Shown piece by piece: positions 30,035 to 59,724 of a stretch of DNA of 64,000 bases. Location of the stretch: assembly GCF_964204865.1 (NCBI RefSeq), contig NC_135256.1, positions 11,532,001-11,596,000 of the forward strand, in the 5' to 3' direction. The DNA comes from Styela clava (Eukaryota). The position numbers and the translations under genes are program-made. Position 1 is the first letter of the stretch. Each line of letters begins with the position of its first letter. The notes under the pieces were generated by a model. That model had not been told where the DNA came from. It did no database searches and worked only from the letters and a program-made list of their open reading frames with translations.

Positions 30035-30648
30035 CTGCAAAAAATATAAGGTTAAGTAAGCTATGAAGTTATCAGTATTTTATGAAATACCACTATCTCA
30101 AAAAGGAATTCCCAGTTTATACCCTATATCTTGAAAACTAACTCTTGGGTTCACGCGTTGGTTTGGCGTTCAGAATGTCTATTAACGAAAAATTTGCATA
30201 CTCTCTGGTTTATTCAGCGAACATCAGATACAGAACCCACCACTGGCTCTTGTCGGAATTTTTTTATCATCTCCCATGGGATTCGAACCTTACTGATATA
30301 TATTTGTTTGCATTTATGATATCAAACAAAAATCGTCAAATTGGATGATAACCACCCAAATATACAGTTTACGTTACGTACAGTCGACAACTATTTATGT
30401 ACCGCCTGCTACACAAAATCGATACTTCAGTATAATATCGTTTATTATCTCCGATTTGTACTTGAGAAGAACTAGCTAAAATCTCGCCATTTTGTTTCAT
30501 TACGCACAACATATTAAACACGAATTCTTTTAGCAAAAATATATTCATTTGTCTTGAGTAAACACTAGATAAGTTCGATGGGGAATTACTTAGCCATGAA
30601 ATAATTAGGAGAGAATTGTAATTACGGTGATTAAGTTATGTCACAAAC

Positions 30649-30741
30649 CTGGCCATTTCGGTGCAGCTTTGGGGGTCCCTCTTTACCACAAACATCTCTC
30701 GTTTTATCGGCGACGATAAAATGGCGGAGGAAAGCGCCCCG
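30649..30741 (-). other. Candidate 93-nt alternative exon of the Fos-like gene (5'UTR or poison exon)
   Basis: GC-rich island bounded by TCTGTAG| and CAG|GTTTGT; contains TAA in the phase 1-1 frame. Confidence 0.4.
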
Positions 30742-31434
30742 CTACAGATATATTTATACGACTCGGTGTAATTTTTAATTGTGTAATAACTGATATATAT
30801 GAAAGCTCCAGGTTTACAGAACCTTGATCATTATTGTCGATGACTATGAAACATTATTACTCAGTAAAAGGGCAAAAATATAATCGATGTTAATCTCCAT
30901 TATGGTAAAAATACAATAGAACTAATTATGAAAATAAAATGGATCAACTAAGTTATTGAAGAGGTATTTAAAGCTTATATATGCTAAATAAACAATGGAC
31001 GATCACGTTATTTCAAATAAAGTTCCAATTTTCTTGAAACTAAGCGAGGACTTCCTGCCTGCGTCCGTATGCTCAATTTAATTAGTCAGAGGTAGCATTA
31101 TTTCATAGGTCATGACATTTAAATTGCAAATCCAAAAAACTAGTACCGGGATTCTATTAACGCTTTTAATAGGGTGGAGTACAGAAAGAGGTTAATGAAA
31201 TGGGTGAGTAGAGACGAATTGTCGCCACGTTCATTAAATTAGCGATCTTAAATTCATGAACAAATATCTTAATTTACTAACAACGAAAAATATTATATAT
31301 AGCGAATTAAATACAATATTGCCAGATATGCTTTAAGTTTAAAACCACGTTGAAAAGATTTATCAGAGTATTATAAATATATCCGCAAATAAAATAAAAA
31401 TGAGATTCGGCAATCGATGGCCAAAATTACTTAC

Positions 31435-31700
31435 AAAATTGGGTTAAATGAATACTGTTAATATTCGTATTTGCCACGTTTTGAAGGGAATACAGTCAAC
31501 TTTCTGTCACGTGAATCCCGTCTTCTATCAATTTGGGGTTATTTTTTTGAGCGAGACCGTGTTGATTCAAAAACTTTTATAACTTTTAAAGTAGTATATG
31601 TCTTGGAATATACAAAACCATAGAAACTGTTGATAATCTTTTTTGTTTTAAACTCTACCGAAGCATTCATAAATCATCGTTGTATGTAGCTTATATATAG
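31435..31700 (-). promoter_or_regulatory. Candidate proximal TATA promoter and non-coding first exon of the Fos-like gene
   Basis: CTATATATAA at 31691-31700 (minus strand) followed ~260 nt later by donor TTTT|GTAAGT at 31435/31434. Confidence 0.35.
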
Positions 31701-32859
31701 CATTTGCCCCTTTAATTATTTAATGATGATTATCGCGACATAAATCGACCCCGAGTGAATCAGAATTACCTTTTTCGTTACACTGAACAGAGGTACGCGG
31801 AAGATTGGCAACGATGCCTTACTCTCGTTTGGACAGGTTAAATATAAAATTATAAAATAATCTCACGACACGATGCAAAATTATATCAGATTAGTCAAGG
31901 AAGAGGAAACAAATTTTGTTGATAACATTCAGAATCACGTCAATTAACTTTATTGTCAATACGTCAATGTAAAAAAAGAGTGTGATATCGATGTATTTGT
32001 ATAAAATTTCTCTAAAATAGAATCCTGGACACTGAACAATACGTTTTGTAATTTACACATATATACTTTAGAACCAACTATGGACCAAATCAGTGGTTCC
32101 CAACTGGAGGTTGGTAGGCTGCCAGGGGTCTAAGTTAACATTTACGGGAGAACGTGTGCTTTTGATATACATAATAGGAACAGAAAAGTGAAATAAAATG
32201 AAAAATATAGAGAAAACACGAAATTTTGATCCTATGTTTTATAAAGTATACAAAAAATAAGGAGCCATTTCGTCAATGGAACGTATGGCACTGTTGTCTG
32301 GAGCATAAAGAGATTGGTCGTAGCATTACGAATGAGAAACATGTATATAGTTTCGGAGCTCAATGATATCAAAGATATAATTAGTACATTACGAAACGCA
32401 AAAATTGTTAAGACATTATACTTTCGAATTCAAAATAGTATGAAATTGCTGTAATACCAAAGATTACTTGCTAATAATCTTATTGCATGTCAATTAAACC
32501 CGATTAAGATTAATATATGTTTATTTATTACTCAAATATGTTTACTATATATATACATAATATGCGCCAAGTGATTTGTTTAAATATGAACTCTTTCGAG
32601 GAACCCTCAGACATCCGTTCTACTTAATACTTAATACAGCACTGTTGATGAACATTTCGTTTTTAAGTACAGTAAATACGGAATAAATATAAATGATTAA
32701 TGGAGTATTCAAACGTTCGAAGTTAGGAGTTAAAGATAACCAGTATATCGATATATCTAAAATATATTAACGTTAGATTTATTACCACAAGTACATGGGC
32801 ATATTGCTTCATTTTGACTATTTTTTCCCATGACTTATAACAATACAAAACCAATTTTA

Positions 32860-33060
32860 ACTATGATTTATATATATTTTTCCTAAAATTACCGAAAAAT
32901 ACGCTTTGTTGAATATTATATATGGCCAGTTCAAAACGTGCTGCTACTATTCTGTCATGATGAATTCGAATCTATAAGGTTTCTTATTTTCTCCCAATAT
33001 GTTGATATGCTGGCTTTATTGGAGATTTTCGAGAAATCCTGCCCCAAAACGAGGCATTAT
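32860..33060 (+). repeat. Dispersed partial copy of the ~360-bp tandem repeat at 47.4-48.4 kb
   Basis: Shares tattatatatggccag...ctactattctgtcatgatgaattcgaatcta...tgctggcttta with 47868-47970. Confidence 0.75.
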
Positions 33061-36000
33061 TGAAATTCAGTCAATTCCAAACAACCCTCTGATACAGCAT
33101 GGAATTTGAAATTGGGACTGTGTCTATATATTACAAAGATGAATAGTGTGATGAATAATTGTTTCACTTTAATTGCTGTCGTTAGATCACTCAAAATATA
33201 CATTTCCTAGCACAAAAAAAAAGACTTATAACAAGAGTTTTGTCGTCAATATCTTTTTGATGCTGGCAATTTGAAAGCCTTAATCACATCAGTCATGTCT
33301 AACATTTTTTATGGATCGAATGTTTAAAATGTGCATCGGAACTCCGCTTCTTATAAATTAAAATATGATTAGGTAGGGGTCGAGTACAGTTTTAAAATAT
33401 TTATCGTATAAGTCGACGTTAATCCATTACCCTTACTAACAAAAAAGAATTGAGTAGGTATGGTGAGAATGGCAAACCTACTTGATTGGTTGGTTTACAT
33501 CAGCATCTTCCGAGAATACAAATTGTTTGGAAACAAGTTCGTAAAATTGTTTGTATTTTTGGTATTTGTTTCCAGAGCACGAACCCACTTACAAATCTTC
33601 GCATGTGTTTTCGTTTAATTAGGATGGCCAACGGTTAGACTGAAGAGCTCTGTGAGCCATCTTTTTTTCATCTATCTTTCGTGGATGTCGAATCTGAATG
33701 ACTCGATTATGGCAATTAATGCTCAAATTACTTTTGAATTCGTTATTTGTAGAGGAAAAGCAATCTACTTGCGAAACATCTCAGCAGTGTAAAGTAACGT
33801 AAATTATAAGATACCCATCAAACCAGTTTTGCTTGCGATGATATCATGACTAGATTAGAGTTTACACTCACGCAGATGGAATTCTGATATATTTTCTGTT
33901 TCTCAGATTTGTAGATTAAAATTCATTCACTTGAAAAACAGCAATCTTGCTGCTATTGTTTAATTTTGGTGTCAATTTACTGGATTTTACAAGAAATGAG
34001 CATTATATTGAAAAATAAATCGGAAATATGAACGAATTTCCTGAAAGATTATGGTAGTTTGATCAAAAAGACTCACGGACGTAAACTGTTGGCGTTTCCA
34101 CCTCTCGCATCATAAGTTCGGCAACATTTTATATTGAAACTGACCGAATTTCAATCAAATTGTGTATACATGAGGGTGTTATATTATTCGAATAGCGTCT
34201 GTGTACATTTCATCCATAAAAAAAGGTGATCTCTGAGCCAAATACGCAGCATTTTGTAGATGGGATCGAGTTTACAGTACGGACGACGATTTGGAGTCAA
34301 TCATATTTGATTTTTTTCAACCTCGGTACAATACGGTAACAAGAGCACCAACACAAATATGACAACAGTAATCAATCCAACGACATATCAATGATTTGTA
34401 TAAGATAAGCGCGCACTTACGGGACGGGACATATACGAAATGGCAACGCAAAGAGGTCCAAGTTTCGAGCCACATACTTTCATTTCTAAATACTTAGATA
34501 TATTCAGACCAACTATAGTAAACAAAATTTATATGATTCGACCAGTATTCATTCCTTCGGACAATGAAAAAATTAGAGTTGTTAAACTAGAAGCTTAAGG
34601 AACAATATGAGTGTTCATCGGGTGTAAAACTGAATATGCCGATGTATTCATCTTTAGTTTAATATTTTATCGTCATATGTTATGCAGTAAAAGACAAACT
34701 ATTCAATAATGATAAAGATTATGTTGAATATCCATGCTATGTTGTCAATGACCTTTTCTGTTATGCCGCATTATTACTTGCATTAATTCGTGATCCGTGA
34801 TTAAGCGCTGTATTGGTTTTTGCAAAAAAGTGTTTTACTTGGAATTCAAAAATAATCTATCGAAGGATAAATCATCGTCGGGTCAAAGGCATTAAAATAT
34901 GATATGATTAGTATTGTATGTATGTGTGATATGAAATAAAATCTTAAAATTTAAAACCTGATTTGAAAAACATTGCACAGAATATACAAAAAGCTTATCC
35001 CGAATTGAACAATGTAATAAAGATGTAATTTTATTACTTATTCTGCGAGAGTTGGGCGACTTTAGGCATCTTTCTAATGTGGTTATATTTATTGGATGTC
35101 GAAGATATCTTCCAGCACTCAAATATTTTGTGGACTGTTTTTGGAACAGGAAATGGTCGAAGTCCCTAGAAATCTGTTATTTTTATACTTCAATTTTCTC
35201 GATGGACCCCAATATTTCACCCCAAATATTGTTTTTTTTTTCTAACGCACGAAAACACCTTTCTATGATATTCGGTACACACCTTCATATGACCTTCGAT
35301 AGAATTCTCTTAACATTTGGATAATTTTTTCTAACTTTTGTGTCAATATATTTGAGTATTGCTTTCTAGTTATTTTTAAATTATCGTACAAAACGATTCA
35401 GTCGGAACATAGTCGTAAAGTAAGACTAAAACATTAATAAAATATGATTTAAGATTCGATCATGTTCGATAGCAAAAAAATGACTCTCAATTGAATCGTG
35501 CCTAGAGCAATATTTACTATTACGGATTGTATTTGGAACTCAAAGACACACCACGGGCAACAATATCATACTATAACAGCTTTTGTAATTATCTTCGAAG
35601 GGCCATCAGCTAGCATAGCCTTGTGTCCTTAGTTTATTATTACCATGCCCCAAGTTAAGAATAGACTAAATTTAATTGACTAGAGAAGAGATTGGTATCT
35701 CGGGACATTTTTGTTTTTACGGTCAGGATAACGTGTCAAGTATAATTCGAATGATTCAGGCATGATTATAAATACAACATGTCTTTTCAGGATATGTTAT
35801 CGCGGACAGGATCAACAAATGAATGCAACCTTTCATTTCGTAAGCCCATGTTCATAAGAAGTATGAATAAAAAGCTAATCGACGAGCTCGGTACACTGAT
35901 GATTTCATTCAGGTCATGTCTGTTGGGCATTTTCAGTTCGCGTGTGCTTACGAAACGGTGATTTCATCATCGCGGTATTGGAAAAGCCTATCTGCACGTG

Positions 36001-36632
36001 GTTATTACCTTAATTCATACAGTTTATAAAAAGGCTTTGTTCGGCGTTACCTAAAAGTACACTGACATTGACAGTTTCTTCATTGATTTCCGATTAACAT
36101 TGGCCTCGGGCAAACAAAATGGCGGTTAGGAACAATTGACAAGCGCTTTTACATGTCTGTATTAGTCTATCAGTTAAATTTCGCTGTTATATCTATTCAG
36201 ATTTACTACTGAATGTACTTTTTGAATTTCAATGGTCGTATGTTCATCAAAAATACGTTAGACTAGGTTTCAACACTAACTAAACCAAGATTGACAGATG
36301 ATTCATATTGAAGACGTTGAAAGACGAAGTTTATCCATCAAACTATTTTGAAACAATTATAGTTAATATGTAACAAAGTCGTCATGCTATGTTTCAACAT
36401 ATAATTATAGAATAATTCTACTAATTCTAGTAAGTTAGCACTTTTTATTATTACATATATATGAACCTTACATTTCAAACCCAGTGCTAAACTTTTGCGA
36501 AAGATTCGCCATTTTGGTTTGTATCCATGTTGCTGGAATATAAGAAAAACGTGCGAGGCAACAGCAGAGAGGATTTTGTCAACCGTTTTTCATATTCTCC
36601 AAATCAATATTATTTTAATAAAGTTAACTCAC

Positions 36633-36759
36633 CTCCGCCTTCTTCTCTAAGCACATCCATACAAGCATCAATCACTTCAGAAGGCTTGGTATACTTTCTT
36701 GCCATCACGTTCGATGTCACCACATAAGCACCAGGTGGAGAATCTTCTCTGATTTTCAT
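36633..36759 (-). CDS. fos: Fos-family bZIP transcription factor, probable first coding exon
   Basis: ATG at 36757-36759; MKIREDSPPGAYVVTSNVMARKYTKPSEVIDACMDVLREEGG; donor G|GTGAGT phase 1 joins in frame to the acceptor at 30034; total CDS 2844 nt = 947 aa + stop. Confidence 0.6.
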
Positions 36760-38401
36760 TTGCTACTGAGAGTTGCCGATGCATTCGATAAACATTGATA
36801 GTGATTGATTCTTTCTAATAGTGACTGATTTCATAAAACTCCTAGCGAATCACTCGAAATCGAAAAGCAAGTCTGCGCTGATGACACATGACTTCAAATA
36901 TTCCAATCTAACATAGGACCTATCCTTCATTAAAATTAAATAACGCAACAATGAAGTTTATTCCACTACGTTTAAAATGAATCTTTCCTATGCTGGTATC
37001 ATCTATTTCGAAGATATACCTAGTTTTGTTCATCGCAGGTTCAGACGCGATTTTTGTCAAAAAAGGGTAGAGCCACGTGAATCAGTTTTGTCTGGAATGG
37101 CATTCCACAGACATTCCGGTGATGACTGCCTGAAAAAAGTTGTCAATTCGTACGCGTGGATCGCAAATCTGAAAGAAACCTATGCTTTAAAAATCTACAG
37201 TATCACATATCGAACGTGTATAGCAAAATACCGTACATATACCCTTTACGGAATTGTGTAGCGAAGACGACTATGTGATATCATAATTATGAATCATCAA
37301 ACAGGAATAGTGATCAAGGATACCGCGACTCGTTCTTAACACGTTGTACACTTGCTTGGTTAATTGGATATTACTTCATAAGAGTAGAAGATACAATGGT
37401 TCATCTTCAAGTTATACGGATATTAAAAACTTCCGCCGGAGCTAAAATACAGGAAATTTGTGAACTGTGGCTTTGGGACAGTGTGAGGAAAAATGCCCCG
37501 CCTGCTGACGTCATTAAATCAACAACCAACCAAATCTTTCGCGAATACGAAAACAACTTTCAACAATTGTGATGATTCATCTATACCCACGGAAACCGTC
37601 TTGTACGCAATTTGTTCTTTGAGAATAGCAGCAATCTGTACCCTTTATAGCATTATTCACGGACGAAATTCCAATGTGTGGTTTCAATAATAGTGTCAAT
37701 TATTATTTTTATTTATACCACATTTATACGACTACACGGAGAGCAGATAAAACGAAAGTATATAAAACAGTCATACGAGTTTGTACTCCATTTTCGATTT
37801 CATGCCTTATTATTAAATGTCGACTGTTAATGAAAACATCAATATATTAGCATTTCATGTAAACCTTTGACAATTTGAATAATTAATTAATGGGTTTGGG
37901 TTCAGATTTATTCTTACATACAGTTTTACTTTAACTGAGTGAAATAGACTAAACTGAAATTAAATATCTGTATTTTGAAATTGGAAGTGTCACATAAATA
38001 GAGGTTATTCGTTGCTCGATAAGTAAGTAAAAAACACCAAGTAAAATTTGCAAAACACTCTCTAATAATAATTCATCAGTCATTAAAGAATTAAAGTTAA
38101 TAAGACTTCATGTTGGCAAAATATGAACGGAATGAAATATTGACTTTGTTTACGTTCCCTGGTCGAAAATCCCGATGTTGTTCATCAACCTCGGTATTAT
38201 TTAATGAAGCTTAATTACGAATACTTCGAACTTAGAATTTATGCGCGGCCTGAATAATAGTAGAATGTTGCTCATTAGTGAAATTGTTGTTCGAAAGTTC
38301 TATATCCAAATGAAGCTATCCAACTCCAAACAGATTGCAGCAGCAATAATATTAGCGAAAAATTTAAATGTTATACTGAAGAATAATTAACTTCATAAGT
38401 C

Positions 38402-40734: not shown

Positions 40735-42060
40735 ATGGACCTTTTACCTCTGAAAAATTCTTTCTATACTTTACCATGGGCATGGACCTTTCCCCGAGCA
40801 TCGACTTCCTTGTTTACTTCGTGACGTTGGCCAATCAGCAAGATGCAAAAAGTGACGTAACAATGCTCCCTTTTCGCATCCGTTCAGTCACTTTTTTCAC
40901 TCAGACAGATTTCCAAGCGTGGTCGTAAACATTACCTCGTTTTCGCATTTATGAACTCTAGTCGTTAGTTTTCAATCGTGTTTCGGAAACTTAAATATAA
41001 ATCAGATAATTCAATGATCACTCTGTCTTCTTAGGAGTTTTAATTTAATTGCAGTAATAAAAAATTAGTGTAGAAATAGCTGTGATAAATAAAATACCGG
41101 GTTTCTAAATCTGATAGACTAGGCTAAAATTCTTTACCGCTACTTTTAGAAAACAAATTGTTGTATGCGATGAATCATAATGATGGTTTGAAACGCATAC
41201 CCCATTTTACAGGCGTCAACTCGAAAGAGCACTCTTAAAATTTTGTAATGGTAAAGTATGGGAAGAATTTTTCGACGGTTAAAGGTCGGGGAAAGGTCCA
41301 TTGCAAAATTTTCAGGGCTTATTTTCAGAGTGGTTCCGCGAGTTGGCGCCTGTAAAATGGGGTACGTGTTTCAAAGCATCATTATGATTCATCGTATACA
41401 ACAATCTGTTTTTTAAAAGTACCGGTAAATTTTTTTAGCCCAGTCTTCCACAGCTATTTCTGCACTAAATTTTTGTTACTGCAATTAAATTAAAACTCCT
41501 AGGAAGACAGAGTGATCATTGAATTATCTGATTTATATTTAAATTTCCGAAACACAACTGAAAACTAACGATAGAGTACAGAAACGCGTAAACGAGGTAA
41601 TGTTTACAACCACGCCTGAAAATCTGTCTGAGTGAGAAAAGTGTCTCAGAGAATGCGAAAAGGCAGCATTGTTACGTCACTTTTGCATCTTGCTGATTGG
41701 CCAATGTCACGAAGTAAACAAGAAAGTTGATGCTCGATTCGTTAGTTTTCAGTTGTGTTTCGGAAACTTAAATATAAATCAGATAATTCAATGATCACTC
41801 TGTCTTCCTAGGAGTTTTAATTAAATTGCAGTAATAAAAATTAGTGTAGAAATAGCTGTGATGGACTAGGCTAAAATTCTTTACCGGTACTTTTATAAAA
41901 CAGATTGTTGTATGCGATGAATCGTAATGATGGTTTAAAACACATACTACATTTTAAAAGCGTCAACTCGCAAAAGCACTTTTAAAATAACCCCGAAAAT
42001 TTTCCAATGGTAAAGTATAGAAAGAATTTTCCGGGGGTCAAAGGTCGGGGAAAGGTCCAT
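40735..42060. mobile_element. Nested cluster of three copies of the ~520-bp TIR element
   Basis: Intact forward copy 40782-41301 (atggacctttccccga...tcggggaaaggtccat) sits inside a reverse copy (40735-40777 plus 41302-41736), followed by a 5'-truncated forward copy 41737-42060. Confidence 0.85.
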
Positions 42061-42183
42061 TGAAATGACTGCTTTATTTCTGAGAAACCTTATTGTGAAT
42101 GAAGTTATTACGAGGATAAAAAATAAAGATTCAGCTGGGTCTGTATGTCTATTTAATATTTGCTAAATTTCGTTAGTCTACGC

Positions 42184-43290: not shown

Positions 43291-43575
43291 ATGGATGGGA
43301 TTTATCACATGGGGGAAAAGAGCCGATAAGACGGCTAAATCATATGGCGAACCACGGTTTCTCGTCTGGTTACCGGATGATGCATGGACTTGATGGTGTA
43401 GGAAGCCGTAAACGACCAGCGGTTACATAAACCGCCCAACGGCGGCGAGGAGTCAAGCAATCCTCTCGCACATAATTATCCTCCATTTCCTGGATTCGAA
43501 CTCCCGCAGGGTAATCAGTGGCGAGTTAGCGATCGTCTTTATAACGCTTAGCACGATACGCCACACCGCCGAGCC
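43291..43575 (-). mobile_element. tRNA-derived SINE, copy 1
   Basis: Minus strand: A-box-like TGGCGTATCGTGCTAAGCG, B box GTTCGAATCC; body homologous to 59398-59724; short ATCC-repeat tail. Confidence 0.8.
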
Positions 43576-45175: not shown

Positions 45176-45468
45176 ATTAGGTTCAAATGTAGGTCACACT
45201 AAATATTTGATTGTGACTTTAGAACTAATTTAGGGCAATAAAATTATATCAAGATTTTGCAATGAACATCCATAATTAGGTTCGAATGTAGGTCACACAG
45301 AATATTTGATTGTTACTTAAGAACTAATTTAGGGCAATAAAAATATATCAAGATTTGGCAATGAACAGTCATAAATTAGTTTAAATGTAGGCCACACAAA
45401 ATATTCGATTGTGACTTTAGAACTGATTTAGTACAATAAAAAAAATATCAAGATTTAGCAATGAACAT
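45176..45468. repeat. Three tandem copies of a ~99-bp unit in an RPL35A intron
   Basis: Units start at 45176, 45275 and 45375: attag(g)tt.aatgtagg.cacac..aatatt.gattgt.actt.agaact.attta...aatgaaca. Confidence 0.9.
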
Positions 45469-46166
45469 ACGATAGTCTGACTAAGAGATCTTCAGGGAGC
45501 TGCACAAAAAACTACTACACAAACTTCTCGGCTGAACAACAATTAAAACAAGATGTTCAAAATAGCGAATGACTAATGTTAAACCGCATCAAAGTCGCTA
45601 TCCCAGAATTTATTAACAAACATTTTCCTTTCATATCCTTTAATTAAACAACAACTTGCCAACCGCTGAACATACTTGTTACAAAAATATTAATAAAATA
45701 AGTTTAATAATTATGTCAGTTTTTAACGAGGCTGACAGATGAAACCAGTTCGAGCCAGCAGAAAGCTTAATAGGTCTAAGAAATCAGCCATGTGTGTATA
45801 GTTTGGTAATGCAAAAAAATCTCAACTAAAAATAAACTGATTTGATTTTCCACAGATGCTACATGATGTGAAACAAACGCAATTTGTGAATTGTCTACCT
45901 TGTCTAGGAATAAAATTTATGACGATAATCCCACTACCAGCACAAGACACCAAATGAGTAGATGCAACAGTTGCTCTCATTATTTAAACAAAAGTAATTC
46001 AGTATTAAAGAGATACTAAAAGAAAATCATACTAAAGAATTATATTACATTATTTGAAGCCTTTTAAATACTATTCAAAACTGATACACATTGTTTGAAT
46101 CAGAAAATCTTAATCAATAAATAAATTGAAACAACATAAATTTCTGTACAAAATTTTGTAACATAC

Positions 46167-46993: not shown

Positions 46994-47439
46994 TGAGTCG
47001 CAACATATATATCGTTGCCAGATTTTTTAAATTCGATTCATCAACGACAAATGAGAAAGCGAGAGATAAAACATTTGATTCGTTTTGGAGAATCTGTATA
47101 AAACAATTATGAATTGTAAATTATTACTTGTTTATTGTTATATAACATTATGATAACAAAATTAAAATCATTCATATAGTATCCTTACTATAAACTTTGT
47201 CGCTGTCACTTGTAGGTGTCGCTGCCTTAAGACCATTTGATGTCCCTTGCGACTTCTGTAACGCAATTTAAGTTAGTTTCCTTTTGCTTCTTTCGTTCTT
47301 CTTTCGTTGCTCCTTTTGCTTCTTTTGTTTTTTCCGCAAATTACAACAACAACTTGTTAGATGTAGAACACGGAATTTAGACAATAGTTTTAGAAAATAT
47401 TTACTCGAGTGTTTATTAAATTTGAGTTGAACCACAAAA

Positions 47440-48360
47440 CCCCATTGGAATTTTTTTCGAATTGTTAAAAATTCGAAGATAATACGCTGTGTTTGGGATT
47501 ATATACAGCCATATCAAACCGTGCTGCTACTGCTCTGCTATGATTAAATGGAATCTGAACGGTTCTCCCTTTTTCTAATATTTCGTAATGTTGGCTTCAT
47601 TGTAGGTTTTCAAGAAATCGACCAACCAAAACTGTAATTATTCAAAATAAAAAATAAAATCCACGAGAGGCCGTATAATGTTTATAGTTATTTTATACCA
47701 TTCCCAACTTATTCCAAGTGTATTAGACGTTCCGTATCGGTATATGAAACGGTAAAAAAGGTAATTGTTCAATTATTTATTAAATTTATTCGAAATACAA
47801 AACCACTTTTACCTATGATAAATATATATTTTTCATAAAATTATCGAAATATACACTATGTTTTTAGTATTATATATGGCCAGATAAAACGTTTAACTAC
47901 TATTCTGTCATGATGAATTCGAATCTACAAATTTTTTTTTCTTCTAATATGTTGTAATGCTGGCTTTATAGTAGGTTTTCAAAAAATCGCTTATTCAAAA
48001 CTGTAATTTTTCTACATTTCTAAAGAATTCACGAGGTGGCGTAAAATGTTTTTTATTTTTTTATTTTATACCTCCGATACTTGTTTTGAATGTATTAGAC
48101 GTTCAGTAACAAAGTTAAAAAATACTTGTTCAATTTTTCAGTAAATTTAGTTACATAGTTTATTTAAACTATGATACATGTATATTTTTCATTAAATTAT
48201 TTGAATATGCGCTATGTTTGGCAATATATATGACCATGTTGAACCATGCTGCTTTTCTGTCATCATAATGAAATCGAATCTATAGTTTCCCTTTTTCTTT
48301 AAATATGTCGTAATGTTGGCTTTTTTAGAGGTCATCGAGAAATACCTGCCCAAAAACTGG
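47440..48360. repeat. Diverged tandem repeat, ~360-bp unit, ~2.6 copies
   Basis: Anchors ctatgata at 47813 and 48169, tgtattagacgttc at ~47719 and ~48091, tcgtaatgttggctt at ~47583 and ~48308. Confidence 0.8.
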
Positions 48361-48449
48361 TCATTAGATCAACTGTAATCAATCATTCTCATAATACTTG
48401 TTTTACAGTTTTTTGGACACGTTTAGTGGCCATAACGATCGTTTCAATA

Positions 48450-48590
48450 TTATGTTGTTGTTGTTGTTGTTGTTCTTGTTCTTTGACACGTTTTTAAAAA
48501 ATCGCTTTTCTCTTCGAATACTGGACCAATTGCTTTGAAATTTTCAGTGGTTAAAGATTAATTTCTTCGCTAGAAGGCTATTACTTATTA
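48450..48590 (+). repeat. (GTT)n-containing dispersed repeat, possibly Helentron/HINE-like
   Basis: Microsatellite followed by ...ggaccaattgctttgaaattttc...ttcgctagaaggctatt; related copy at 4187-4275. Family assignment is inference. Confidence 0.45.
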
Positions 48591-49361
48591 TTTATATTTA
48601 TATATATATATAGCTATTATTTATTTCAAAATTTTGCGTGAATTCTATGAAATTTGATATTTCGTCTAAAATTTTGCTGTATTATTTTTTATCCATGAGA
48701 ACACGGATTTTAGTCAGTGTCATGACTGGCTGTACGTTTTGATTCTGCAAAATTCTTGCTACTGGAAATTCAGAACTCTTTTGAGGGTACCGGTAGCGTC
48801 AAAGGTACCGGTAAAGACTGATTCGCTCTGGTCTAACGTGTCCATATATTTGTGCGTAGCTCTCTTGTTTATTGCTACTGTTGCTTGTCTATGCGAACTA
48901 CAGGGTTGTCGCTATAAAAGCAGAAAATTTATCAAACATTCAATTTTTACAAAGAATGACTTTAATGAGATTATTAAAGACATGCTATATTACATTCATA
49001 GATGATAAAAATGTCATCTGTGCAGAGCAGTATCTTAGTCCAAGAAATGATTAAGAATGCATTTTATTCCTGATCTCATTCGAGCTTTCAAATTTCTGCT
49101 TTTCTAGTGACCACCCTGTATATTTTAAATGTGGCATCCAATGTTATCATGCGAATCTAGACTTAAACAGACTAATTTAAAAGGTTCCACCGAATACCAC
49201 ATAGCCGTATAATTATCATTTCATATTTACATAAACATTTTAAAGGTTCTAGGTAACATTTCGAGTGCAATCTTCTGATTGGACCCATCTCTTTCAAAAA
49301 CTTTTTCTCGTTTCGACCTTCTTAGATGCATCAGATGGAATATATATGGGTGGCACTAAGG

Positions 49362-50031
49362 CAGGGTCGTCCAACCCATGGCCGCGGGTCACATGTAGCC
49401 CGCCGAAGGTTTCCAAGTGACCCGCGTGATATTATTCGAATCCCAATGTTTTTCATAAATTTGAACCATTATTGAAACTTCTAATAAAAAGTTTTTCCTC
49501 GTCGTTTAAACGCGCGAGAAGCACCACCCAGCTATCGAAAGCTTTTTTATGTCCCTTTGTGGGCGTAATTGCTGGAGAGAGATGTTTGGATTTATTTTTA
49601 TCGTCTGCCATGTATTTCAATCTGATTTCCTGTATTTTTTCTGCGAAGCTACAAGAGGCAGTTTTCATGACCTCAATATTTGACAGCACTTACTTGTGCG
49701 AGCAAGTTTTTTCACAGATGAACCATGTCAAATCCCCATGAGATCACTAATTTCGCTGATGAAAAATTCGCTCTGCATTCACAAACTTATTGAATGAAAG
49801 CGGTGTCATACTTGACATTGAAATATATATGCGTAGTAAAAACTTTTGACTTTACTGTATCTTCGTATTTTCATTGTGCTTATAATTTTGGTTTGCGTTT
49901 TTTTTGTTTTTGTTTTTTATTAATCTGCAGTCGGCGTAGTAAAAACTAGAACATAACCACCATGTCAAGTGGCCCGCGCGATCATTCGTGAACTAAATGT
50001 GGCCCTTCGGCCAAAAACGTGGACCACCCTG
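49362..50031 (+). mobile_element. Internally deleted hAT/Charlie transposon with transposase C-terminal remnant
   Basis: TIR cagggtcgtcca / tggaccaccctg; TSD cactaagg / cactaaag; ORF end SIFDSTYLCEQVFSQMNHVKS resembles the hAT dimerisation motif (FGSTYLCEQxFSxM). Confidence 0.88.
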
Positions 50032-50589
50032 CACTAAAGAATGCGTTTCACTTACTTAACATCTTCTGAATAGCGTTTCATCTCTTAAAAACATTCTCAT
50101 AGAATTCGGTTCCTAACTAAAAAAATTAAAAACCAGTGTAAATTACATTCTAACATGGGATATCTTCCTGATATTTTACATGATGCTTGTAGACCTTATT
50201 CATACAAAAACATTTAAGCTCAATTTTGATATGATTGCTTTTTATACCTATATAGACGTTACTTTGAGTCATTCACCATTTACATGTTTTAAGTAAGTAA
50301 CCAATGCCATACACTCACATGAAAACTTTCTCTCATTAATTTAATCATCAATCAAAAATGTCAAATTCGTTAATATCATAATTGATATAGCAAGTAATTT
50401 GTCTGAATTTATATCTAGGTATATTCAATTAATGCTTATATCATCCCAACCTCTTGCTAACTAAATTATTCTTCCATTGAAAGTTTTTGATTGTTTCGGA
50501 CAAACCTACAATATCACATCCTAGATGTCTTATCACATCTAAAGCTCTTGTCTTTCACGTTATAAATATTTGTATATGATGTGTAGTGG

Positions 50590-50804
50590 CAGTAGTGGCA
50601 AATCTGCGTGAAATGGCGCCTATGGAAATGCGCCCTCTTGATCGATCGTTTACTGAAATTTTTAACTACGGTTTGTTGCTTTGGGATACATTTACGTTAT
50701 TTAAGTAATTTTTATCAAAATGTGGTTTCGCCCATTGTGCGCCCTCATCCAAATGGCGCCCGTGGCAGGGGCAGGGGTCTTCTTGCTATATATGTATGCC
50801 ACTG
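50590..50804. mobile_element. Decayed MITE with GGCGCCC motifs
   Basis: cagtagtggca...ggcgcc...gcgccc...gtatgccactg. Confidence 0.35.
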
Positions 50805-51346
50805 AGCCCAGGTATCGCCCAGAAATTCACAATTCTTCATTACGTGTCTGATCATGACAAAAGCTTGATATCTCTATGTTGCTCGCTTTTAAACAATCCG
50901 TCCCTGCATTCCCATTAATATCTCAACTTTATCCACCTTTTCTCATAGTTTTTTTCCGAAGACTAGATGTATATTTTTGTTTATTCTCTTGCTTGAATAA
51001 TAATAAAATTATTGAAGCAATATCCGTTCTCCCTGCTTATTGGTTGTCGGGGACTGGGTTTTGTTAAAGGCTAATAAGAAATGGGAGTTGGAGCATAGGT
51101 GTAAGAAGTGTCTCAAAACGTCATTTTGTCTAGTTTCTGCGGATTTCACATTAGGACGTAACAAGGTTACGACGTCACACTGGCTAGCCGCGATTTTATG
51201 GGGCGCCCTAACGCCGGGTCCGGGCCTCGTTTTTTTATTTTATATATATATCTCTGGCCGATCGTAGGCCATAGATAAATCGAGTATAATTGCTGAAATT
51301 TATACACGAAATTTATAACGATGCTTGATCATACATGATACGAATG

Positions 51347-51605
51347 AAAATTTTATATTTTTGAGGTCCTGACCCTTCGATTTCCTTCATCTGACTCTTC
51401 GATTTCCTTCATATTCTCTTATTTTGGGGTTTCTGTAGTCCACAGCTCGAGCTTCTCCTTCGTTATATAGTTCTTTGCGCCGCCCTTTCAGTGACGACAC
51501 AGATTTGACAAGCGGATATTACACATTCGCGGGAGTCAAACTTTAGTCCCCGTGAACAAATATATGGTCTACCCAGCGCCTTTACCAACTAGGCCAATTA
51601 AGAAC
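51347..51605 (-). ncRNA. Candidate Pol III unit with tRNA-like head (left arm)
   Basis: A box TGGCCTAGTTGG (51596-51585), B-box-like GTTTGACTCCC (51541-51531), first T4 at 51350-51347; cloverleaf not intact. Confidence 0.35.
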
Positions 51606-51723
51606 TTAGAAACAAGGGTCTATGGTCTAATATTTATGTATCATCTCAAAGGATTTGTAAAAAAAATATATAAAAGTCATTCATGATGAAAGATAAATAT
51701 TAGAACTTAGATCTTACTCTCAC

Positions 51724-51954
51724 GTTCCTCCTTGGCCTGGTTGGTAAAGGCGGTTGCTATACCTTTAGTTTGTTCATGGTGACCAAAGTTTGAATTCCGC
51801 GAACTTACTGTCCCGATTCAATTTCGTGTCTTCATTAATTGGATTACGCAGATATATAAAGTATGAAGGAAGCTCCAACTTATAAGAAGATAGAAATCCC
51901 AAAATCAACGAAAATGAAGAAAATCGAAGAGTCACCTTGGAAATGGAGATTTTT
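51724..51954 (+). ncRNA. Candidate Pol III unit with tRNA-like head (right arm)
   Basis: A box TGGCCTGGTTGG (51733-51744), B-box-like GTTTGAATTCC (51788-51798), first T-run at 51950-51954; cloverleaf not intact. Confidence 0.35.
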
Positions 51955-52939
51955 GAAATTTATATTCGGCTCATGCATGATCAGGCTTGATTGTGGATAA
52001 ATTTCGTAAATTATACTCGGTTTATCTACGGCCGATGGTCGGCCACACATAAAAATAAATCGCGCCGTTTCTGCCCGGATCTAGCGCCGGCCTGCCCCAA
52101 AATATGGTTGCTCGCTAGGGTGACGCCATAACCTAGTGACGTCATACGAATGTTGCACACGCCCTTTTCTACATTCCGATGACTGCTAGTTTATCCCGAA
52201 CAACTACTGGAAACCTAACAAACCAATCCCAGACTCGGAGCAAGCATGGAAATATTTTCTCATCGGTTATATCTAATATCCATTAGTTAACAAAATGTCA
52301 AAATAACAAAAACTGTAAAGATTCTAGGCACAGGACGACGAAATTTGTGACAAAGTACAGGAACTTTACCAACTTTCAAGATACCGTATTCGAATAAATC
52401 TTGCGTTCATATCTATGATAGCAGCCCACGAGCTGATAGTTATTTGATGGCAGCCCTCACAGGTCCACATCACCAAGAAAGTCTGTCCCTAACCAATCAA
52501 TACCTATCATGACCCACGATCTGGGGTGGCTAAGAAAGCGCTGACCTTCTAAAACCCGGATACAAAACTGATTAAAATAAAATGGAAAATACGATTGGTA
52601 CAATTCTAAAACACTCTATATCAAGATAAAACTGCCATTCTACATCTGCTTCACGTGAGATTATTCATCTTTTACTTACGTCTAGTACGCACCTGAAATA
52701 TATACAAATAGTCTAACACGGTGTTGGAAGAAATATTCCACAAACCGCCATGATTTTAATTAAAATAATAACTTCTAGATTAAAATTGCTATCCCCAATT
52801 CCATATTCTGCAATTAAAATTACGAGTAAAACACCCATATGCTTGGTATTGAATTTAAAAAGCATCACTTGGGATTCGATGAAAGCGAAAATTCACAGCA
52901 TTCGAAATATCTGTGCAAATTGATTCTATAACCTTAAAG

Positions 52940-53191
52940 CACTGTTCGGCAACCTTTTGTCGCTCGTGGGCCAAAATTAAGGGTTGCAAGTCGTTGGCGA
53001 GCCGCACATATTTTTAGAAAGTTGAAAACCGAACGGATGATACTTTTTATAATAAAAATCAAGCAGTGATACATCTGTCGAATAGAATATAGATTTATTT
53101 CCTCATTGCATTGCACCTAAAAAAATTCTATTTGAATCCCATTTGCGGGCCGGATTATGTTATTCTGCGGGCCGTAGGTTGCCGACCCCTG
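52940..53191. mobile_element. hAT (Charlie-like) MITE
   Basis: cactgttcggcaacct / aggttgccgacccctg; flanks ccttaaag / ccctgaag; gcgggcc subterminal motifs. Confidence 0.7.
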
Positions 53192-53855
53192 CCCTGAAGG
53201 GATGTAATGAAGATAGCCATAGACAGGGATGTGCCAAACTTTTCCGCTGCCTAGGCGAGTTTCCGATAATGGTGCCCCTTATACCCAATTTGAAAAAGGA
53301 TTTGGGAATAAACAAATTATAGCTAGGCAAATATACTAAAATTCTAAACTGCAGCTAAAATTGGATATTAAAGATATTGATAAAGTAATTGGTTGAACAA
53401 TTTTTTTACTATATTTCACGCCTTTAGCAGAAATATATGGAATATTTACTTACTTTATTCAGATTTGTAATATGGAGACCGCCTTGATTCGCTGTTCCCG
53501 GTAGAATCTGAATGATAAGTTAAAGTTTAATGACGCAGATTTTTTCACAAGAATAACAGCTATTTACATATCTGTGGCTATTTGACGAAGTACGCTGTTA
53601 TGGGGGACGGACACACGGCTGTTTTCTTCCCAGTGAGTTATTGATGAAACATGATTCTTATTGTGAGTGACGACTTAGCGAACTGACTGAGTGATGGATG
53701 TTTTCAGTAATTTATATGCCTTGAGGACCCATTAAAATAAAAGCTTGCATACAGTCATGTTTAAATATGAAATTTAACTATCTTCTTAGTAATCAAGATT
53801 CGATTATTAAGTTACCAGGTATTCCCGGCTTTAGTATTGATTGCCAGTTTAGCAG

Positions 53856-53922
53856 GTGCTCCCGAAGTATGTGCACCAAGATGACGCACGGCCTGAACAT
53901 AGTATGTGTACCAGATTAGGGT
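53856..53922 (+). mobile_element. Truncated copy of the GG..CC palindromic MITE
   Basis: ggtgctcccgaagtatgtgcaccaagatgacgcacggcctgaacatagtatgtgtacca matches 14532-14590. Confidence 0.75.
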
Positions 53923-53964
53923 GATCAGTTGCGCGCTATCCTGGCCGCATGTTTGACACCCCTT

Positions 53965-54270
53965 AACAACATCTTCCTTCTTCGCAAAGCCCTGTAATTA
54001 GGTTAAAATTTTTAAAACTTTGGCTCTATAATCAAGTTGTGATAAAAACTTTAGATTTTCTAACATTTTTAGACCAACTAGCTACCTTTCCATTTACATC
54101 GACCAATCGTCACTCGACCACCAGCAGTAACAATATCTTCCTTCTTCGCAAAGCCCTGTAATTAGATTAAAAATTATAAGGCTTTTACTTTATAATCAAG
54201 TTATGATAAACTATTTTAGATCAGTTACCTTTATACCTACATCAATCAGTCGTCACTCCACCATCAATCA
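53965..54270. repeat. Direct tandem duplication (~164 bp)
   Basis: atcttccttcttcgcaaagccctgtaatta at 53971 and 54135, colinear to tcgtcactc. Confidence 0.85.
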
Positions 54271-55760
54271 TGCCAACATATATTAATATCGATAGATTTT
54301 TCTTCATTTTTGAGCCTGTAATTTGAAAATAATAGTTATGGCTTACTTTTTAGCGATGATACAATGTTCTTGTGCAAAGTAAAAAAATTATAAACAGCAC
54401 GTTGACGCGGATTACAACCCACAAAAAATATGATCAGAAAACAAGACTTGATCCATAAAGAAAAACGTTGCAAAGCACGTAAATAAATACACTCGAAAGG
54501 TATAAGAAAAGAAAAGAAACAAGAACTCAATGCTGAAATTTATATTCATCATATAACACTCAAAATTCTGAATATGACTGAAAAAATGCGCTACCCAATT
54601 GTATCGAAATAGATTATTATTTATACAATTCAAGTTCTAGCTTATATATGCATGAAGAATGGGAGTAATCAGTTAACTTAATTATAGCTAGACCTTCCCC
54701 GCCTTAAAACTGTGAATATATCTGGCTCAGACCAGCGCAGAAACGACCTCACACTACCACGCCCTGAACCAAAATGTGGTACGCGCGCCAAATATTTTTT
54801 TAAGGTTGAAAGAGAAAAAAGAGCAGTATCAAAGAGAAACATAAGGGGAGGGAGTTGTCATTTTTAATAAACAAACAAAGATACTGTAATCTTTATCTCA
54901 CTCTAATCAGTGACCAATGATTGTTGTTTATTAGTGAAAATAAAAAACGTAGATTTATTTGGGATGTGACTGAGAAGATTGTCTGATTAAACCACATTCC
55001 ATGGAAACTTTATCAAGACAACTATTTATTTGTTGTTAGTCTTTTTGTGTTTCGTTATAAGCCCAGTCTCGACTAAACATGTTCTGGGAGTCATAATAGG
55101 GCATTGGTGACGTTTACGGGGCTCCATTCCTTTGGGTAATTATCATCGGAATTGATGTTATGCGACGTCTGTTGACATGGTCTACACTCTACAGAACTTC
55201 GCTTCATGTTTGTAATTGAGTAAGTCCGTTAGAAATTTCAAATATGTATTCATTTATTGATTATCATTCATCTATTCCACATTCGTAAGGATAAAAACAA
55301 CCAGCATGCCAGACACCAAAAAACCATAGATGTAATCGAAGATGCTCATAAATGAAGATGATATACATTTTAACCGAGGCTTGTAAAAAGTCACACAAAT
55401 TTCAAGTTAAATTAAGTTCAAATCAAACATTATTAAAAACAATAGTTCTTTAAAAATGCTTACCCTGAAAATATATTTTTGCCTCAAATTATACCAGTGT
55501 TTATATTAGGGAAGTATATATTCATTCACCAAACATTTAAATCTGCATTGTAATGAATTATGTTAGTGTGAGACTTCGACGAGAAAAATTGTTCTCAATA
55601 TTATGATTTCAAACCATCCCAAATGTTTGCATACGGTGTATTAAATTACTTTCATCTGCAATATGTATCCAAGATCATGGACTGCGTATCTGAAACTTTT
55701 CAAAAGTACTATGCATATTGAGTGGTGACTTATTCTGAAGACTCAGGGTCGTATTGTCAC

Positions 55761-59397: not shown

Positions 59398-59724
59398 TAG
59401 GATAGGATAGGATTTACATATTTATCACGGGGAAGAGGAAAGCCGATAAGACGGCTTATCCATATGGCGAACCACGGCCTCTCGTCCGATTACCATTCCA
59501 AGTCGGGTATGGGATTAGTTATATATATTGTTTTTTTTTTCGGAAGTATGGACTTGGTGGTGGAGGAAGCCGTAACCGACCAGCGGTTACGTGAACCACC
59601 CAACGACGGCGAGGAGTCCAGCAATCATCTCGCACATAACCATCCCTGCATGGGATTCGAACCTGCGAACCACTGCAGAGTAATTTTTCCTAACGCTTAG
59701 CCCGTTGAGCCACACTGCTGCGGC
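59398..59724 (-). mobile_element. tRNA-derived SINE, copy 2 (RAB6 intron)
   Basis: A-box-like TGGCTCAACGGGCTAAGCG, B box GGTTCGAATCCC, (ATCCT)n tail; homologous to 43291-43575. Confidence 0.82.

What the first reader, a model, noticed from the sequence alone, without database searches (positions are those of the whole stretch)
51020..52256. Kilobase palindrome carrying two back-to-back Pol III-like (tRNA-headed) units
Seen: arms of ~600 bp are reverse complements with patchy conservation (short near-identical blocks separated by diverged stretches). Near the centre each arm has, pointing outwards, ATAAATATTAGA about 30 nt upstream of a GTTC start, an A box (TGGCCT[A/G]GTTGGTAAAGGCG), a B-box-like GTTTGA[A/C]T[T/C]CC, then GCGAA. 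The first T4 run falls at nearly equivalent positions, predicting ~230-nt (+, 51724-51954) and ~255-nt (-, 51605-51347) RNAs. Established: A box, B box, upstream TATA and T-run are type-2 Pol III gene architecture, and retroposed SINEs do not carry their upstream flank. Inference: this arose at the DNA level and is either a divergent pair of undescribed Pol III ncRNA genes (or a SINE source locus) or a foldback transposon with tRNA-like promoters in its arms. The T-stem does not pair, so these are not tRNAs. They differ from the SINE family at 43.3 and 59.4 kb.
Basis: partly seen in the sequence, partly recalled or inferred. Interest (0 to 1): 0.78.

Follow-up and report, generated by a model that had tools for sequence, protein, structure and literature searches.

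The report
Paired tRNA-like promoters inside a transposon
The kilobase palindrome is real, but it is one of about 26 copies of a fixed inner part of a large mobile-DNA family; each arm begins with a decayed serine-tRNA gene that still keeps its polymerase III promoter boxes, and no RNA from it was seen.

Summary
In detail: two ~600-nt arms (best aligned 51152-52146) are imperfect reverse complements, and each carries, pointing outwards, a TATA-like box, an A box, a B box and a T run at the stated places. It is not a single locus. The same palindrome, with the same left/right asymmetry, lies at about 26 loci on 11 chromosomes, always inside the same flanking sequence (block D, 50590-53944) of a repeat more than 13 kb long. 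A relative of that repeat carries a decayed hAT transposase. There are no termini, target duplications or stand-alone copies, so it is neither an independent foldback transposon nor a SINE.

The unit head is a decayed class-II (serine-type) tRNA. D arm, T loop and the 36-nt distance between them match this genome's own tRNA-Ser genes; the stems are gone. The boxes diverge about half as much as their neighbours. That fits a polymerase III promoter or TFIIIC site kept in the master lineage.

Against an RNA gene: no conserved RNA fold, no Rfam family, and no contigs over the units in three probable RNA runs. Those runs instead show a spliced minus-strand transcript flanking the palindrome.

Verdict: a real, transposon-borne module of moderate interest; its expression is untested.

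The parts
51045..51660 (-). Left arm of the palindrome (its unit reads outwards on the minus strand)
   Evidence: Arm alignment; flipped self-match 65.3% over 1051 columns, E 1e-65.
51670..52235 (+). Right arm of the palindrome (its unit reads outwards on the plus strand)
51606..51723 (.). Centre: two divergent TATA-like boxes (51627-51638 minus, 51693-51704 plus). As RNA it would fold into a hairpin.
   Evidence: Fold z -5.1 (+) and -2.6 (-), as expected of a palindrome centre. A TATA-like box lies at -33/-34 in 34 of 42 units.
51733..51752 (+). A box / D-arm remnant, right unit
   Evidence: exact match to the pattern. Identical in the majority sequences of both arm types, 20 of 20. Matches 17 of 19 positions of this genome's tRNA-Ser D arm.
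51577..51596 (-). A box / D-arm remnant, left unit
51788..51803 (+). B box (T-loop remnant) plus GCGAA, right unit
   Evidence: A B box was found in 34 of 42 units, at +62 to +64 in 29. It lies 36 nt from the D arm, as in 5 of 5 tRNA-Ser genes.
51525..51540 (-). B box plus GCGAA, left unit
51950..51954 (+). First T run after the right unit (candidate polymerase III terminator, about +225)
   Evidence: The first T4 lies at +199 to +254 in 25 of 42 units.
51347..51350 (-). First T run after the left unit (+254 here; a 22-nt local duplication at 51370-51412 lengthens this copy)
   Evidence: (I3, I5).
51159..51402 (.). Outer block of the left arm. With 51924-52139 it is the best arm-to-arm conserved stretch (18-19 of 20 in most 20-column windows of the majority sequences); it starts near the T run and extends beyond it.
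51924..52139 (.). Outer block of the right arm, partner of 51159-51402
   Evidence: Not a separate high-copy repeat: 36 genome matches, nearly all at the family's loci.
50590..53944 (+). Block D of the host repeat, which holds the palindrome in every copy
   Evidence: Seven copies match the window from exactly 50590-50593 onwards.
53964..55225 (+). Block E of the host repeat. Its end (54538-55225) is shared with the hAT-bearing relative on C4.
47325..50576 (+). Blocks A, B and F: the 3' part of a related hAT-type element, joined to D at 50577-50590. It holds a transposase C-terminal remnant at 49326-49738.
52476..52692 (-). Exon of a spliced minus-strand transcript just right of the palindrome. 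Upstream exons are 53454-53507 and one ending at 54229.
   Evidence: Joints 52690>53452 and 53507>54229 in X1 and X2. Canonical GT..AG on the minus strand read.
50636..51003 (.). RNA-covered stretch just left of the palindrome (strand not known)
   Evidence: Depth table: X1, X2 and X5 are all positive here and zero from 51004 to 51739.

Best explanation
The palindrome is an old inverted duplication that became a fixed internal module of a dispersed, multi-kilobase, hAT-related non-autonomous DNA repeat. It was copied about 26 times together with that repeat. This part is shown.

Each arm begins, reading outwards from the centre, with what is left of a class-II (serine-type) tRNA gene: a TATA-like box at -34, the D arm (A box) at +8, the T loop (B box) at +63, and usually a first T run near +215 to +235. 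The tRNA stems have decayed, so no tRNA can be made. This part is also shown.

Inferred: in the lineage of source copies the two cassettes worked as polymerase III promoters or TFIIIC/TFIIIB binding sites. They would fire outwards into roughly 215-255-nt unstructured RNAs. That would explain why the boxes stayed nearly identical in both arms while the sequence between them drifted. Most present copies, this one included, are probably decaying relics.
For: Dispersed family. The 1237-nt stretch has 93 genome matches. Full-length copies are 75-86% identical in the same orientation but only 65-71% when flipped, so the arm asymmetry predates the spread. The A-box 20-mer hits 48 places at <=2 mismatches (reversed control 0). 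Of these, 44 lie in 26 loci on 11 chromosomes, and 17 loci carry a divergent pair 145-160 nt apart.

Always internal. Flanks stay alignable in 12 of 12 copies, in the 17 further loci checked, and patchily in the two most diverged loci.

Host repeat. It is more than 13 kb long with a shared left end in 4 copies. A relative on C4 has, in place of D and in order, a zinc finger (Pfam zf-C2H2_12, E 8.4e-6), a FAM200/ZBED5 RNase-like piece (Atlas 0.93) and a hAT dimerisation piece (Atlas 0.95).

tRNA origin. The five genes fetched after the D-arm motif search (5 of 5) are tRNA-Ser by ARAGORN. The unit shares 17 of 19 D-arm positions and 9 of 10 T-loop core positions with them. The 36-nt spacing is found in 5 of 5 of these tRNAs and in 22 of 32 units.

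Constraint. Boxes differ from their arm-type majority at 100 of 1766 sites (5.7%). The 5' and anticodon-like segments differ at 89 of 784 (11.4%) and +131..+235 at 422 of 3250 (13.0%). The two arm types are identical at 20 of 20 A-box sites and 32 of 34 B-block sites, but only 10 of 17 in between (read).

T-run avoidance. In +1..+205 of 33 units there are 9 T4+ runs against 91 A4+ runs, and 26 of 33 units have no T4+ run (shuffle mean 16.0, maximum 26 of 300 shuffles).
Against: No RNA was seen. X1, X2 and X5 have zero depth on 51004-51739. X2 and X5 have zero up to 52475. X1 has only two short low-depth contigs with 5-6 mismatches. These are contigs of runs only guessed to be RNA, laid at >=95% likeness on this copy alone.

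No conserved secondary structure: RNAalifold gives -2.5 kcal/mol and 8 pairs, and the folds score z +0.38 and +1.59. No Rfam family matched.

The best arm-to-arm conserved block is not the promoter head but 51159-51402/51924-52139, which lies at and beyond the T run. A simple 'unit ends at the T run' model does not explain this. The +79..+130 segment is as well kept as the boxes (104 of 1593).

Among the five closest copies the palindrome is no better conserved than block E. Copies share ancestry, so the site counts are not independent. TIRs and target duplications of the host repeat were not found, so 'hAT non-autonomous element' rests on the C4 relative alone.
Confidence: 0.6

Rival explanations
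1. Neutral cargo. A host fragment holding an inverted pair of tRNA-Ser pseudogenes was captured as filler by the transposon and has no promoter activity. The better-kept blocks would reflect gene conversion between arms, local low mutability, or a DNA-level role such as protein binding for transposition.
For: No transcripts over the units. The best-kept arm block lies outside the predicted RNA. Conservation is uniform among the closest copies. No RNA structure.
Against: Exactly the two promoter elements of a tRNA gene, their spacing and a TATA-like box at -34 are what survived. The intervening 17 nt and the acceptor stem drifted. T runs are scarce on the sense strand.
Confidence: 0.25
2. A divergent pair of host polymerase III non-coding RNA genes, or the source locus of a SINE.
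For: Type-2 promoter architecture with an upstream TATA-like box and a T run.
Against: About 26 decaying copies, all inside one repeat. No stand-alone unit among the 42 matches to one unit. No structure or covariation. No RNA seen.
Confidence: 0.05
3. A foldback or MITE-like DNA transposon nested in the larger repeat, mobile on its own.
For: Long inverted arms. Across the more distant subfamilies the palindrome is better conserved than its flanks.
Against: Homology continues past both ends in all copies examined. There are no termini, no target duplications and no copy in foreign flanks. Arms are about 30% diverged in every copy.
Confidence: 0.04
4. An intron-borne hairpin. The palindrome lies in an intron of the spliced minus-strand transcript, and its hairpin is a source of small RNAs or a splicing or termination signal.
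For: RNA-covered blocks abut it on both sides, with zero depth between. Candidate donors lie near 52461/52474 and a candidate acceptor near 50992 (read). The central 118 nt fold well.
Against: No joint across the palindrome was listed (12 joints were not shown). The arms are only 65-72% alike, a poor substrate for hairpin small RNAs. The miRNA-family hits are far below their thresholds.
Confidence: 0.06

Closest known systems
tRNA-derived SINEs (type-2 polymerase III internal promoter)
   Same: The head derives from a tRNA. Only the A and B boxes and their spacing are kept, the stems have decayed, and a T run lies downstream.
   Different: No retroposed single copies, no target duplications, no A-rich or LINE-like tail. 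The upstream TATA-like flank is copied too. Units exist only as fixed divergent pairs inside one DNA repeat.
Rodent 4.5SI / 4.5SH small RNA genes
   Same: SINE/tRNA- or 7SL-derived polymerase III genes with boxes A and B plus a TATA-like box at -31/-24 (PMC10137851; I saw only the search listing with the start of the abstract). From recall, 4.5SH genes are multiplied at the DNA level inside multi-kb repeat units.
   Different: Those RNAs are abundant and demonstrated; here no RNA was seen. Those repeats are tandem and not palindromic.
SINE module carried and amplified by a DNA transposon (V domain in MER6)
   Same: A SINE-type sequence is spread by hitch-hiking in a DNA transposon (PMC6887750; title and start of the abstract only).
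   Different: There it is a conserved central SINE domain. Here it is the promoter head, duplicated in inverted orientation.
Foldback elements / long-TIR MITEs
   Same: Kilobase imperfect palindrome with patchy arm conservation.
   Different: The arms are not the termini of a mobile unit.
Non-autonomous hAT elements (FAM200/ZBED5, 'Buster'-type; the name is recalled)
   Same: The host repeat shares 5' and 3' regions with a copy that carries decayed hAT transposase pieces. ZBED genes derive from hAT transposons (PMC3606216; start of the abstract only).
   Different: Its size (more than 13 kb) is unusual. Terminal inverted repeats and 8-bp target duplications were not found here.
tDNA / TFIIIC 'extra' sites acting as chromatin barriers (recalled, not tested)
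   Same: A and B boxes without a functional tRNA product.
   Different: No evidence of any barrier role here; it is only a possible function.

Membership tests
tRNA gene | Cloverleaf recognised by tRNA finders or a covariance model | tested here: not met
   ARAGORN finds 0 genes in the window and 0 in 22 loci. There is no tRNA hit in Rfam at E<=10 or at E<=1 in 12 copies.
tRNA gene | D arm and T loop at tRNA spacing | tested here: met
   17 of 19 D-arm positions and 9 of 10 T-loop core positions match this genome's tRNA-Ser. The 36-nt spacing holds in 5 of 5 tRNAs and 22 of 32 units.
tRNA-derived SINE | tRNA-related head with A and B boxes | tested here: met
tRNA-derived SINE | Many independent short retroposed copies in unrelated flanks | tested here: not met
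   All 42 matches to one unit lie at the palindrome loci. 44 of 48 A-box hits lie in 26 such loci.
tRNA-derived SINE | 3' tail (A-rich, simple repeat or LINE-derived) and target-site duplications | tested here: not met
   Arms continue as conserved palindrome sequence for about 400 nt beyond the T run. Flanks are shared by all copies.
Foldback / MITE DNA transposon | Inverted arms | tested here: met
Foldback / MITE DNA transposon | Arms are the element's termini, bounded by target-site duplications, in unrelated flanks | tested here: not met
Polymerase III type-2 gene with upstream TATA | A box, B box, TATA-like box near -30, T-run terminator | tested here: met
   Sequence level only. A TATA-like box is present in 36 of 42 units, a B box in 34 of 42, and the first T4 lies at +199..+254 in 25 of 42.
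Polymerase III type-2 gene with upstream TATA | A transcript of the predicted size and strand | tested here: inconclusive
   No contigs over the units in X1, X2 and X5. The data are contigs, the runs are only guessed to be RNA, and only this copy was laid.
Polymerase III type-2 gene with upstream TATA | Polymerase III / TFIIIC occupancy | not testable with these tools
   No ChIP data are on hand.
hAT superfamily, non-autonomous (host repeat) | Shares end regions with a transposase-bearing relative | tested here: met
   The C4 relative shares C16 463-1345 and the E-end, F and tail. It carries zinc-finger, RNase-like and hAT-dimerisation remnants. The Pfam hit is 1.5 bits under its cut-off.
hAT superfamily, non-autonomous (host repeat) | Short terminal inverted repeats and 8-bp target-site duplications | tested here: inconclusive
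   The left end was located in 4 copies. The right end is a tandem-repeat zone, and no matching inverted terminus was found.
Any Rfam RNA family | Score at or above the gathering threshold | tested here: not met
   Best hits are 22 bits (threshold 90.8) in the window and 37.2 bits (threshold 74) in L012. Both are miRNA-precursor models matching the central hairpin.

The most novel reading that the evidence does not exclude
A DNA transposon family that carries, as a selected working part, a back-to-back pair of tRNA-derived polymerase III/TFIIIC cassettes. They might serve as its own chromatin barrier against silencing, or as a source of transposon-borne polymerase III RNAs. The promoter boxes would have been kept by selection on the source copies for as long as the family spread.
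Probability: 0.15. Interest if true: 0.65.

Novelty: new variant of a known kind. Interest (0 to 1): 0.4.

Why it matters
tRNA-derived polymerase III promoters are known as the engines of SINEs, which spread through RNA. Here the same kind of cassette, doubled head to head with its upstream TATA-like box, was spread through DNA as cargo of a cut-and-paste type repeat. Its promoter boxes stayed better conserved than their surroundings.

If the cassettes are active, this would be a natural case of a DNA transposon seeding the genome with paired polymerase III/TFIIIC sites, which elsewhere act as boundaries and organisers of chromatin. If they are inactive, it is an ordinary decayed repeat. The practical lesson is then that such 'gene-like' palindromes in this genome should be checked for copy number first.

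Tried and rejected
LTR retrotransposon. My first idea came from the re-occurrence of 50085-50570 after block E in other copies. I rejected it. Only the C4 relative has that block as a 567-nt direct repeat, the D-type copies have it once, and homology runs on beyond it.

Helitron or tandem arrangement. Considered but not pursued, as no defining ends were seen.

Independent MITE for the outer arm block. Rejected: it has only 36 genome matches, nearly all at the family's loci.

Global alignment of the unit head to tRNA-Ser. It gave weak z scores of 2.0-2.9. The similarity is confined to the D arm and T loop, and the 36 nt between them match at about a third of positions by my hand count, roughly what chance gives.

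Host-element termini. An inverted match of the left end was sought at the right end without success.

Pfam on the transposase pieces. Four of the five pieces gave nothing relevant.

Earlier-findings look-ups. Those by place (near) and by sequence were blank.

Literature searches. None returned a paper describing paired tRNA-like polymerase III cassettes in a palindrome inside a DNA transposon. These are word searches of an open-access library and do not show that it is unpublished. No supplementary files were opened.

Spliced transcript. I read its exons separately and did not join them into a model.
Full report
WHAT IS THERE. The stretch 51020-52256 is an imperfect palindrome. The repeat finder lists four inverted blocks of 41-80 nt at 76-86%. 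BLAST of the stretch against itself in reverse gives 65.3% over 1051 columns, E 1e-65. A global alignment pairs about 51045-51660 with 52235-51670. ARAGORN finds no tRNA in the window. Rfam gives only sub-threshold matches to miRNA-precursor models over the central hairpin.

IT IS A REPEAT FAMILY, NOT A LOCUS. The own genome (377 Mb; the window is C8:11532001-11596000) returns 93 matches to the 1237 nt. Full-length copies are 75-86% identical in the same orientation and only 65-71% when flipped. Left and right arms had therefore already diverged before the family spread. The A-box 20-mer occurs 48 times at two mismatches or fewer (14 exact, 19 with one, 15 with two; reversed control 0). Of these, 44 lie in 26 loci on 11 chromosomes that also match by BLAST, and 17 loci carry a divergent pair 145-160 nt apart. 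A 271-nt query of one unit finds 42 matches, all at those loci. There is thus no SINE-like swarm of single units.

IT IS AN INTERNAL MODULE.
- With a 9.5-kb query the palindrome sits in block D (50590-53944), followed by block E (53964-55225).
- The 17 further loci checked share D flanks. The two most diverged loci (L021, L025) still show patches of them.
- Comparison of 20-30-kb stretches shows a repeat of more than 13 kb. Its left end is common to four copies (C14:1709, C6:9571, C10:2545, C2b:6932 in my oriented coordinates). Its right end is rich in tandem repeats.
- A relative on C4 shares the 5' part and the E-end, F and tail. In place of D it has, in one orientation and in order, a zinc finger (Pfam zf-C2H2_12, E 8.4e-6, 25.8 bits against a cut-off of 27.3), a piece nearest to FAM200/ZBED5 RNase-like clusters (0.93, 188 shared features) and a piece nearest to hAT dimerisation clusters (0.95).
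- The D-type copies lack these pieces.

I read the host as a non-autonomous derivative of a hAT-type transposon. I could not find its terminal inverted repeats or target duplications. In the window the copy is joined at 50577-50590 to the 3' part of another such element (blocks A, B, F).

THE UNIT HEAD IS A DECAYED SERINE-TYPE tRNA. A class-II D-arm motif occurs 722 times in this genome, much of it in tandem arrays. The five loci I fetched are all tRNA-Ser by ARAGORN. Against them, the majority head of either arm shares 17 of 19 D-arm positions (one extra base) and 9 of 10 positions of the T-loop core. The distance between the two is 36 nt in 5 of 5 tRNAs and in 22 of the 32 units where both motifs were found. 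The 36 nt in between match only at about chance level by my hand count. The acceptor and T stems do not pair. A global alignment is accordingly weak (z 2.0-2.9). Leucine-type tRNAs, which are also class II, were not compared.

IS THE ARCHITECTURE KEPT? I examined 42 units from 23 loci. These include one near-duplicate locus pair, L010/L011, and two overlapping units in L025.
- A TATA-like box is present in 36 units, at -33/-34 in 34.
- A B box is present in 34 units, at +62 to +64 in 29.
- The first T4 run falls at +199 to +254 in 25 units, earlier in 9, and not within the 267 nt examined in 8.
- In +1..+205 of 33 units there are 9 T4+ runs against 91 A4+ runs. 26 of 33 units have none (shuffle mean 16.0, maximum 26 in 300).
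- Divergence from the arm-type majority is 100 of 1766 sites (5.7%) for the A-box and B-box blocks. It is 89 of 784 (11.4%) for the 5' and anticodon-like segments and 422 of 3250 (13.0%) for +131..+235. However, +79..+130 is as well kept as the boxes, at 104 of 1593 (6.5%).
- Between the two arm types the A-box block is identical at 20 of 20 sites and the B block at 32 of 34, against 10 of 17 in between (read).

The copies are related by descent, so these counts are not independent trials.

RESULTS THAT CUT THE OTHER WAY.
(a) Arm-to-arm identity of the majority sequences is 71.7% over 661 columns and clearly uneven (0 of 5000 permutations). The best block is 51159-51402 against 52139-51924 (mostly 18-19 of 20), which begins near the T run and runs beyond it. 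It is not a separate high-copy repeat, and I have no explanation for it.
(b) Among the five closest copies the palindrome (0.48-0.97 per 50 nt) is no better kept than block E (0.82-0.98). The excess over flanks seen with 13 copies comes from the more distant subfamilies.
(c) There is no conserved RNA structure. RNAalifold on 33 units gives -2.5 kcal/mol, 8 pairs and one compensatory change. The two predicted RNAs of the window fold no better than shuffles (z +0.38 and +1.59). Twelve other copies give no Rfam family beyond a sub-threshold hairpin match.
(d) RNA. One search found runs of 'organism A'. I laid X1, X2 and X5 (guessed RNA; two studies) and X6 (holds the DNA) on 49900-55400. X6 covers every bin. 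X1, X2 and X5 have zero depth from 51004 to 51739. X2 and X5 have zero up to 52475. X1 has two short contigs (51918-52113 and 52255-52407) with 5-6 differences at depth 4-7. This is weak negative evidence only: the data are contigs, were laid at 95% or more on this copy alone, and the library type is unknown.

A TRANSCRIPT BESIDE IT. X1 and X2 carry joints 52690>53452 and 53507>54229, whose skipped ends read CT..AC. On the minus strand these are canonical introns (AAG|GTAACT ... TCATTCAG|A, and AAA|GTAAGT ... TATTTCAG|G). This also argues that these runs are RNA. RNA-covered blocks (52476-52692 and 50636-51003) abut the palindrome on both sides. Candidate donor sites (near 52461 or 52474) and a candidate acceptor (near 50992) exist, so the palindrome may be an intron of that transcript.

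CONCLUSION. Shown: the palindrome is real and old. It is a fixed inner module of a roughly 26-copy hAT-related repeat. Its two heads are remnants of a serine-type tRNA gene in which the promoter elements, their spacing and an upstream TATA-like box are what survived. Inferred (about even odds): these cassettes were, and in some copies may still be, polymerase III promoters or TFIIIC sites. Not supported: a unique pair of ncRNA genes, a SINE source locus, an autonomous foldback transposon, or a structured RNA.

CONTEXT FROM EARLIER NOTES (unchecked leads). The scan's index lists, on other pieces of this genome, 'an old ~2-kb palindrome with back-to-back tRNA-like Pol III heads' (s1-814210) and 'an inverted-repeat-bounded cassette carrying two tRNA-like Pol III genes' (s1-809997). 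Both agree with the dispersal that I measured myself. A follow-up on another window calls the organism a sea squirt (s1-825770), which I did not verify.

LITERATURE. Three searches gave no description of such a structure. The nearest analogues I saw, as listings with the start of the abstract only, are the tRNA/7SL-derived 4.5SI/4.5SH genes with boxes A and B and a TATA-like box at -31/-24 (PMC10137851) and a SINE domain spread by the MER6 DNA transposon (PMC6887750).

Noticed in passing
G000 C2:9.33-9.46 Mb and C3:23.49-23.54 Mb (not in the window): A class-II tRNA D-arm motif occurs 722 times in the genome (reversed control 0), largely in tandem arrays with spacings of about 0.5-2.7 kb. The five loci fetched are all tRNA-Ser (anticodons aga, cga, tga).
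   Followed up: partly
window 52476-52692, 53454-53507, up to 54229 (minus strand): A spliced transcript with two canonical GT..AG introns is seen in two runs of one study. Its exons are non-coding, and it runs towards the palindrome.
   Followed up: partly
window 52844-53211 and 53764-53947: Two stretches inside block D have about 200 times the depth of their surroundings in the DNA run X6 (28,000-37,000 against about 150), so they are very high-copy short repeats. Loose ends before 52946 end in CAGGGG, which looks like a MITE terminus.
   Followed up: no
window 49326-49738 (+): An open stretch 87% identical (118 residues) to a C4 piece that ends in a hAT-like C-terminal motif. It is a remnant of a second hAT-type element abutting block D.
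   Followed up: partly
window 50577-50590: Breakpoint. Seven other copies match the window only from 50590-50593 onwards, whereas their own upstream sequence continues into the host repeat. The window copy is therefore truncated or recombined here.
   Followed up: partly
window 43300-43574 and 59398-59722: Two copies (81-87% identical) of a SINE whose tRNA-like head reads on the minus strand. The family also occurs inside other copies of the host repeat and is unrelated to the palindrome units.
   Followed up: partly
window 40782-42065: A dense nest of direct and inverted repeats (arms of 104-168 nt at 83-97%). A related copy lies next to the C10 copy of the host repeat.
   Followed up: no
window 45176-45472: Three tandem copies of a 99-nt unit (91% and 67% identical to the first).
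   Followed up: no
window 51370-51412: A 22-nt local tandem duplication (TGAC.CTTCGATTTCCTTCAT) in the left arm, absent from most copies. It shifts this copy's first T run from about +230 to +254.
   Followed up: partly
L045-L047 (C6:4546600-4556000): A 2.8-kb unit repeated at least three times in tandem and once inverted at 96-98% identity. It is also present at the end of the C2b stretch.
   Followed up: no
window 27684-30023 (-): A 779-residue open frame, serine-rich and of low complexity, probably a large coding exon of a host gene.
   Followed up: no
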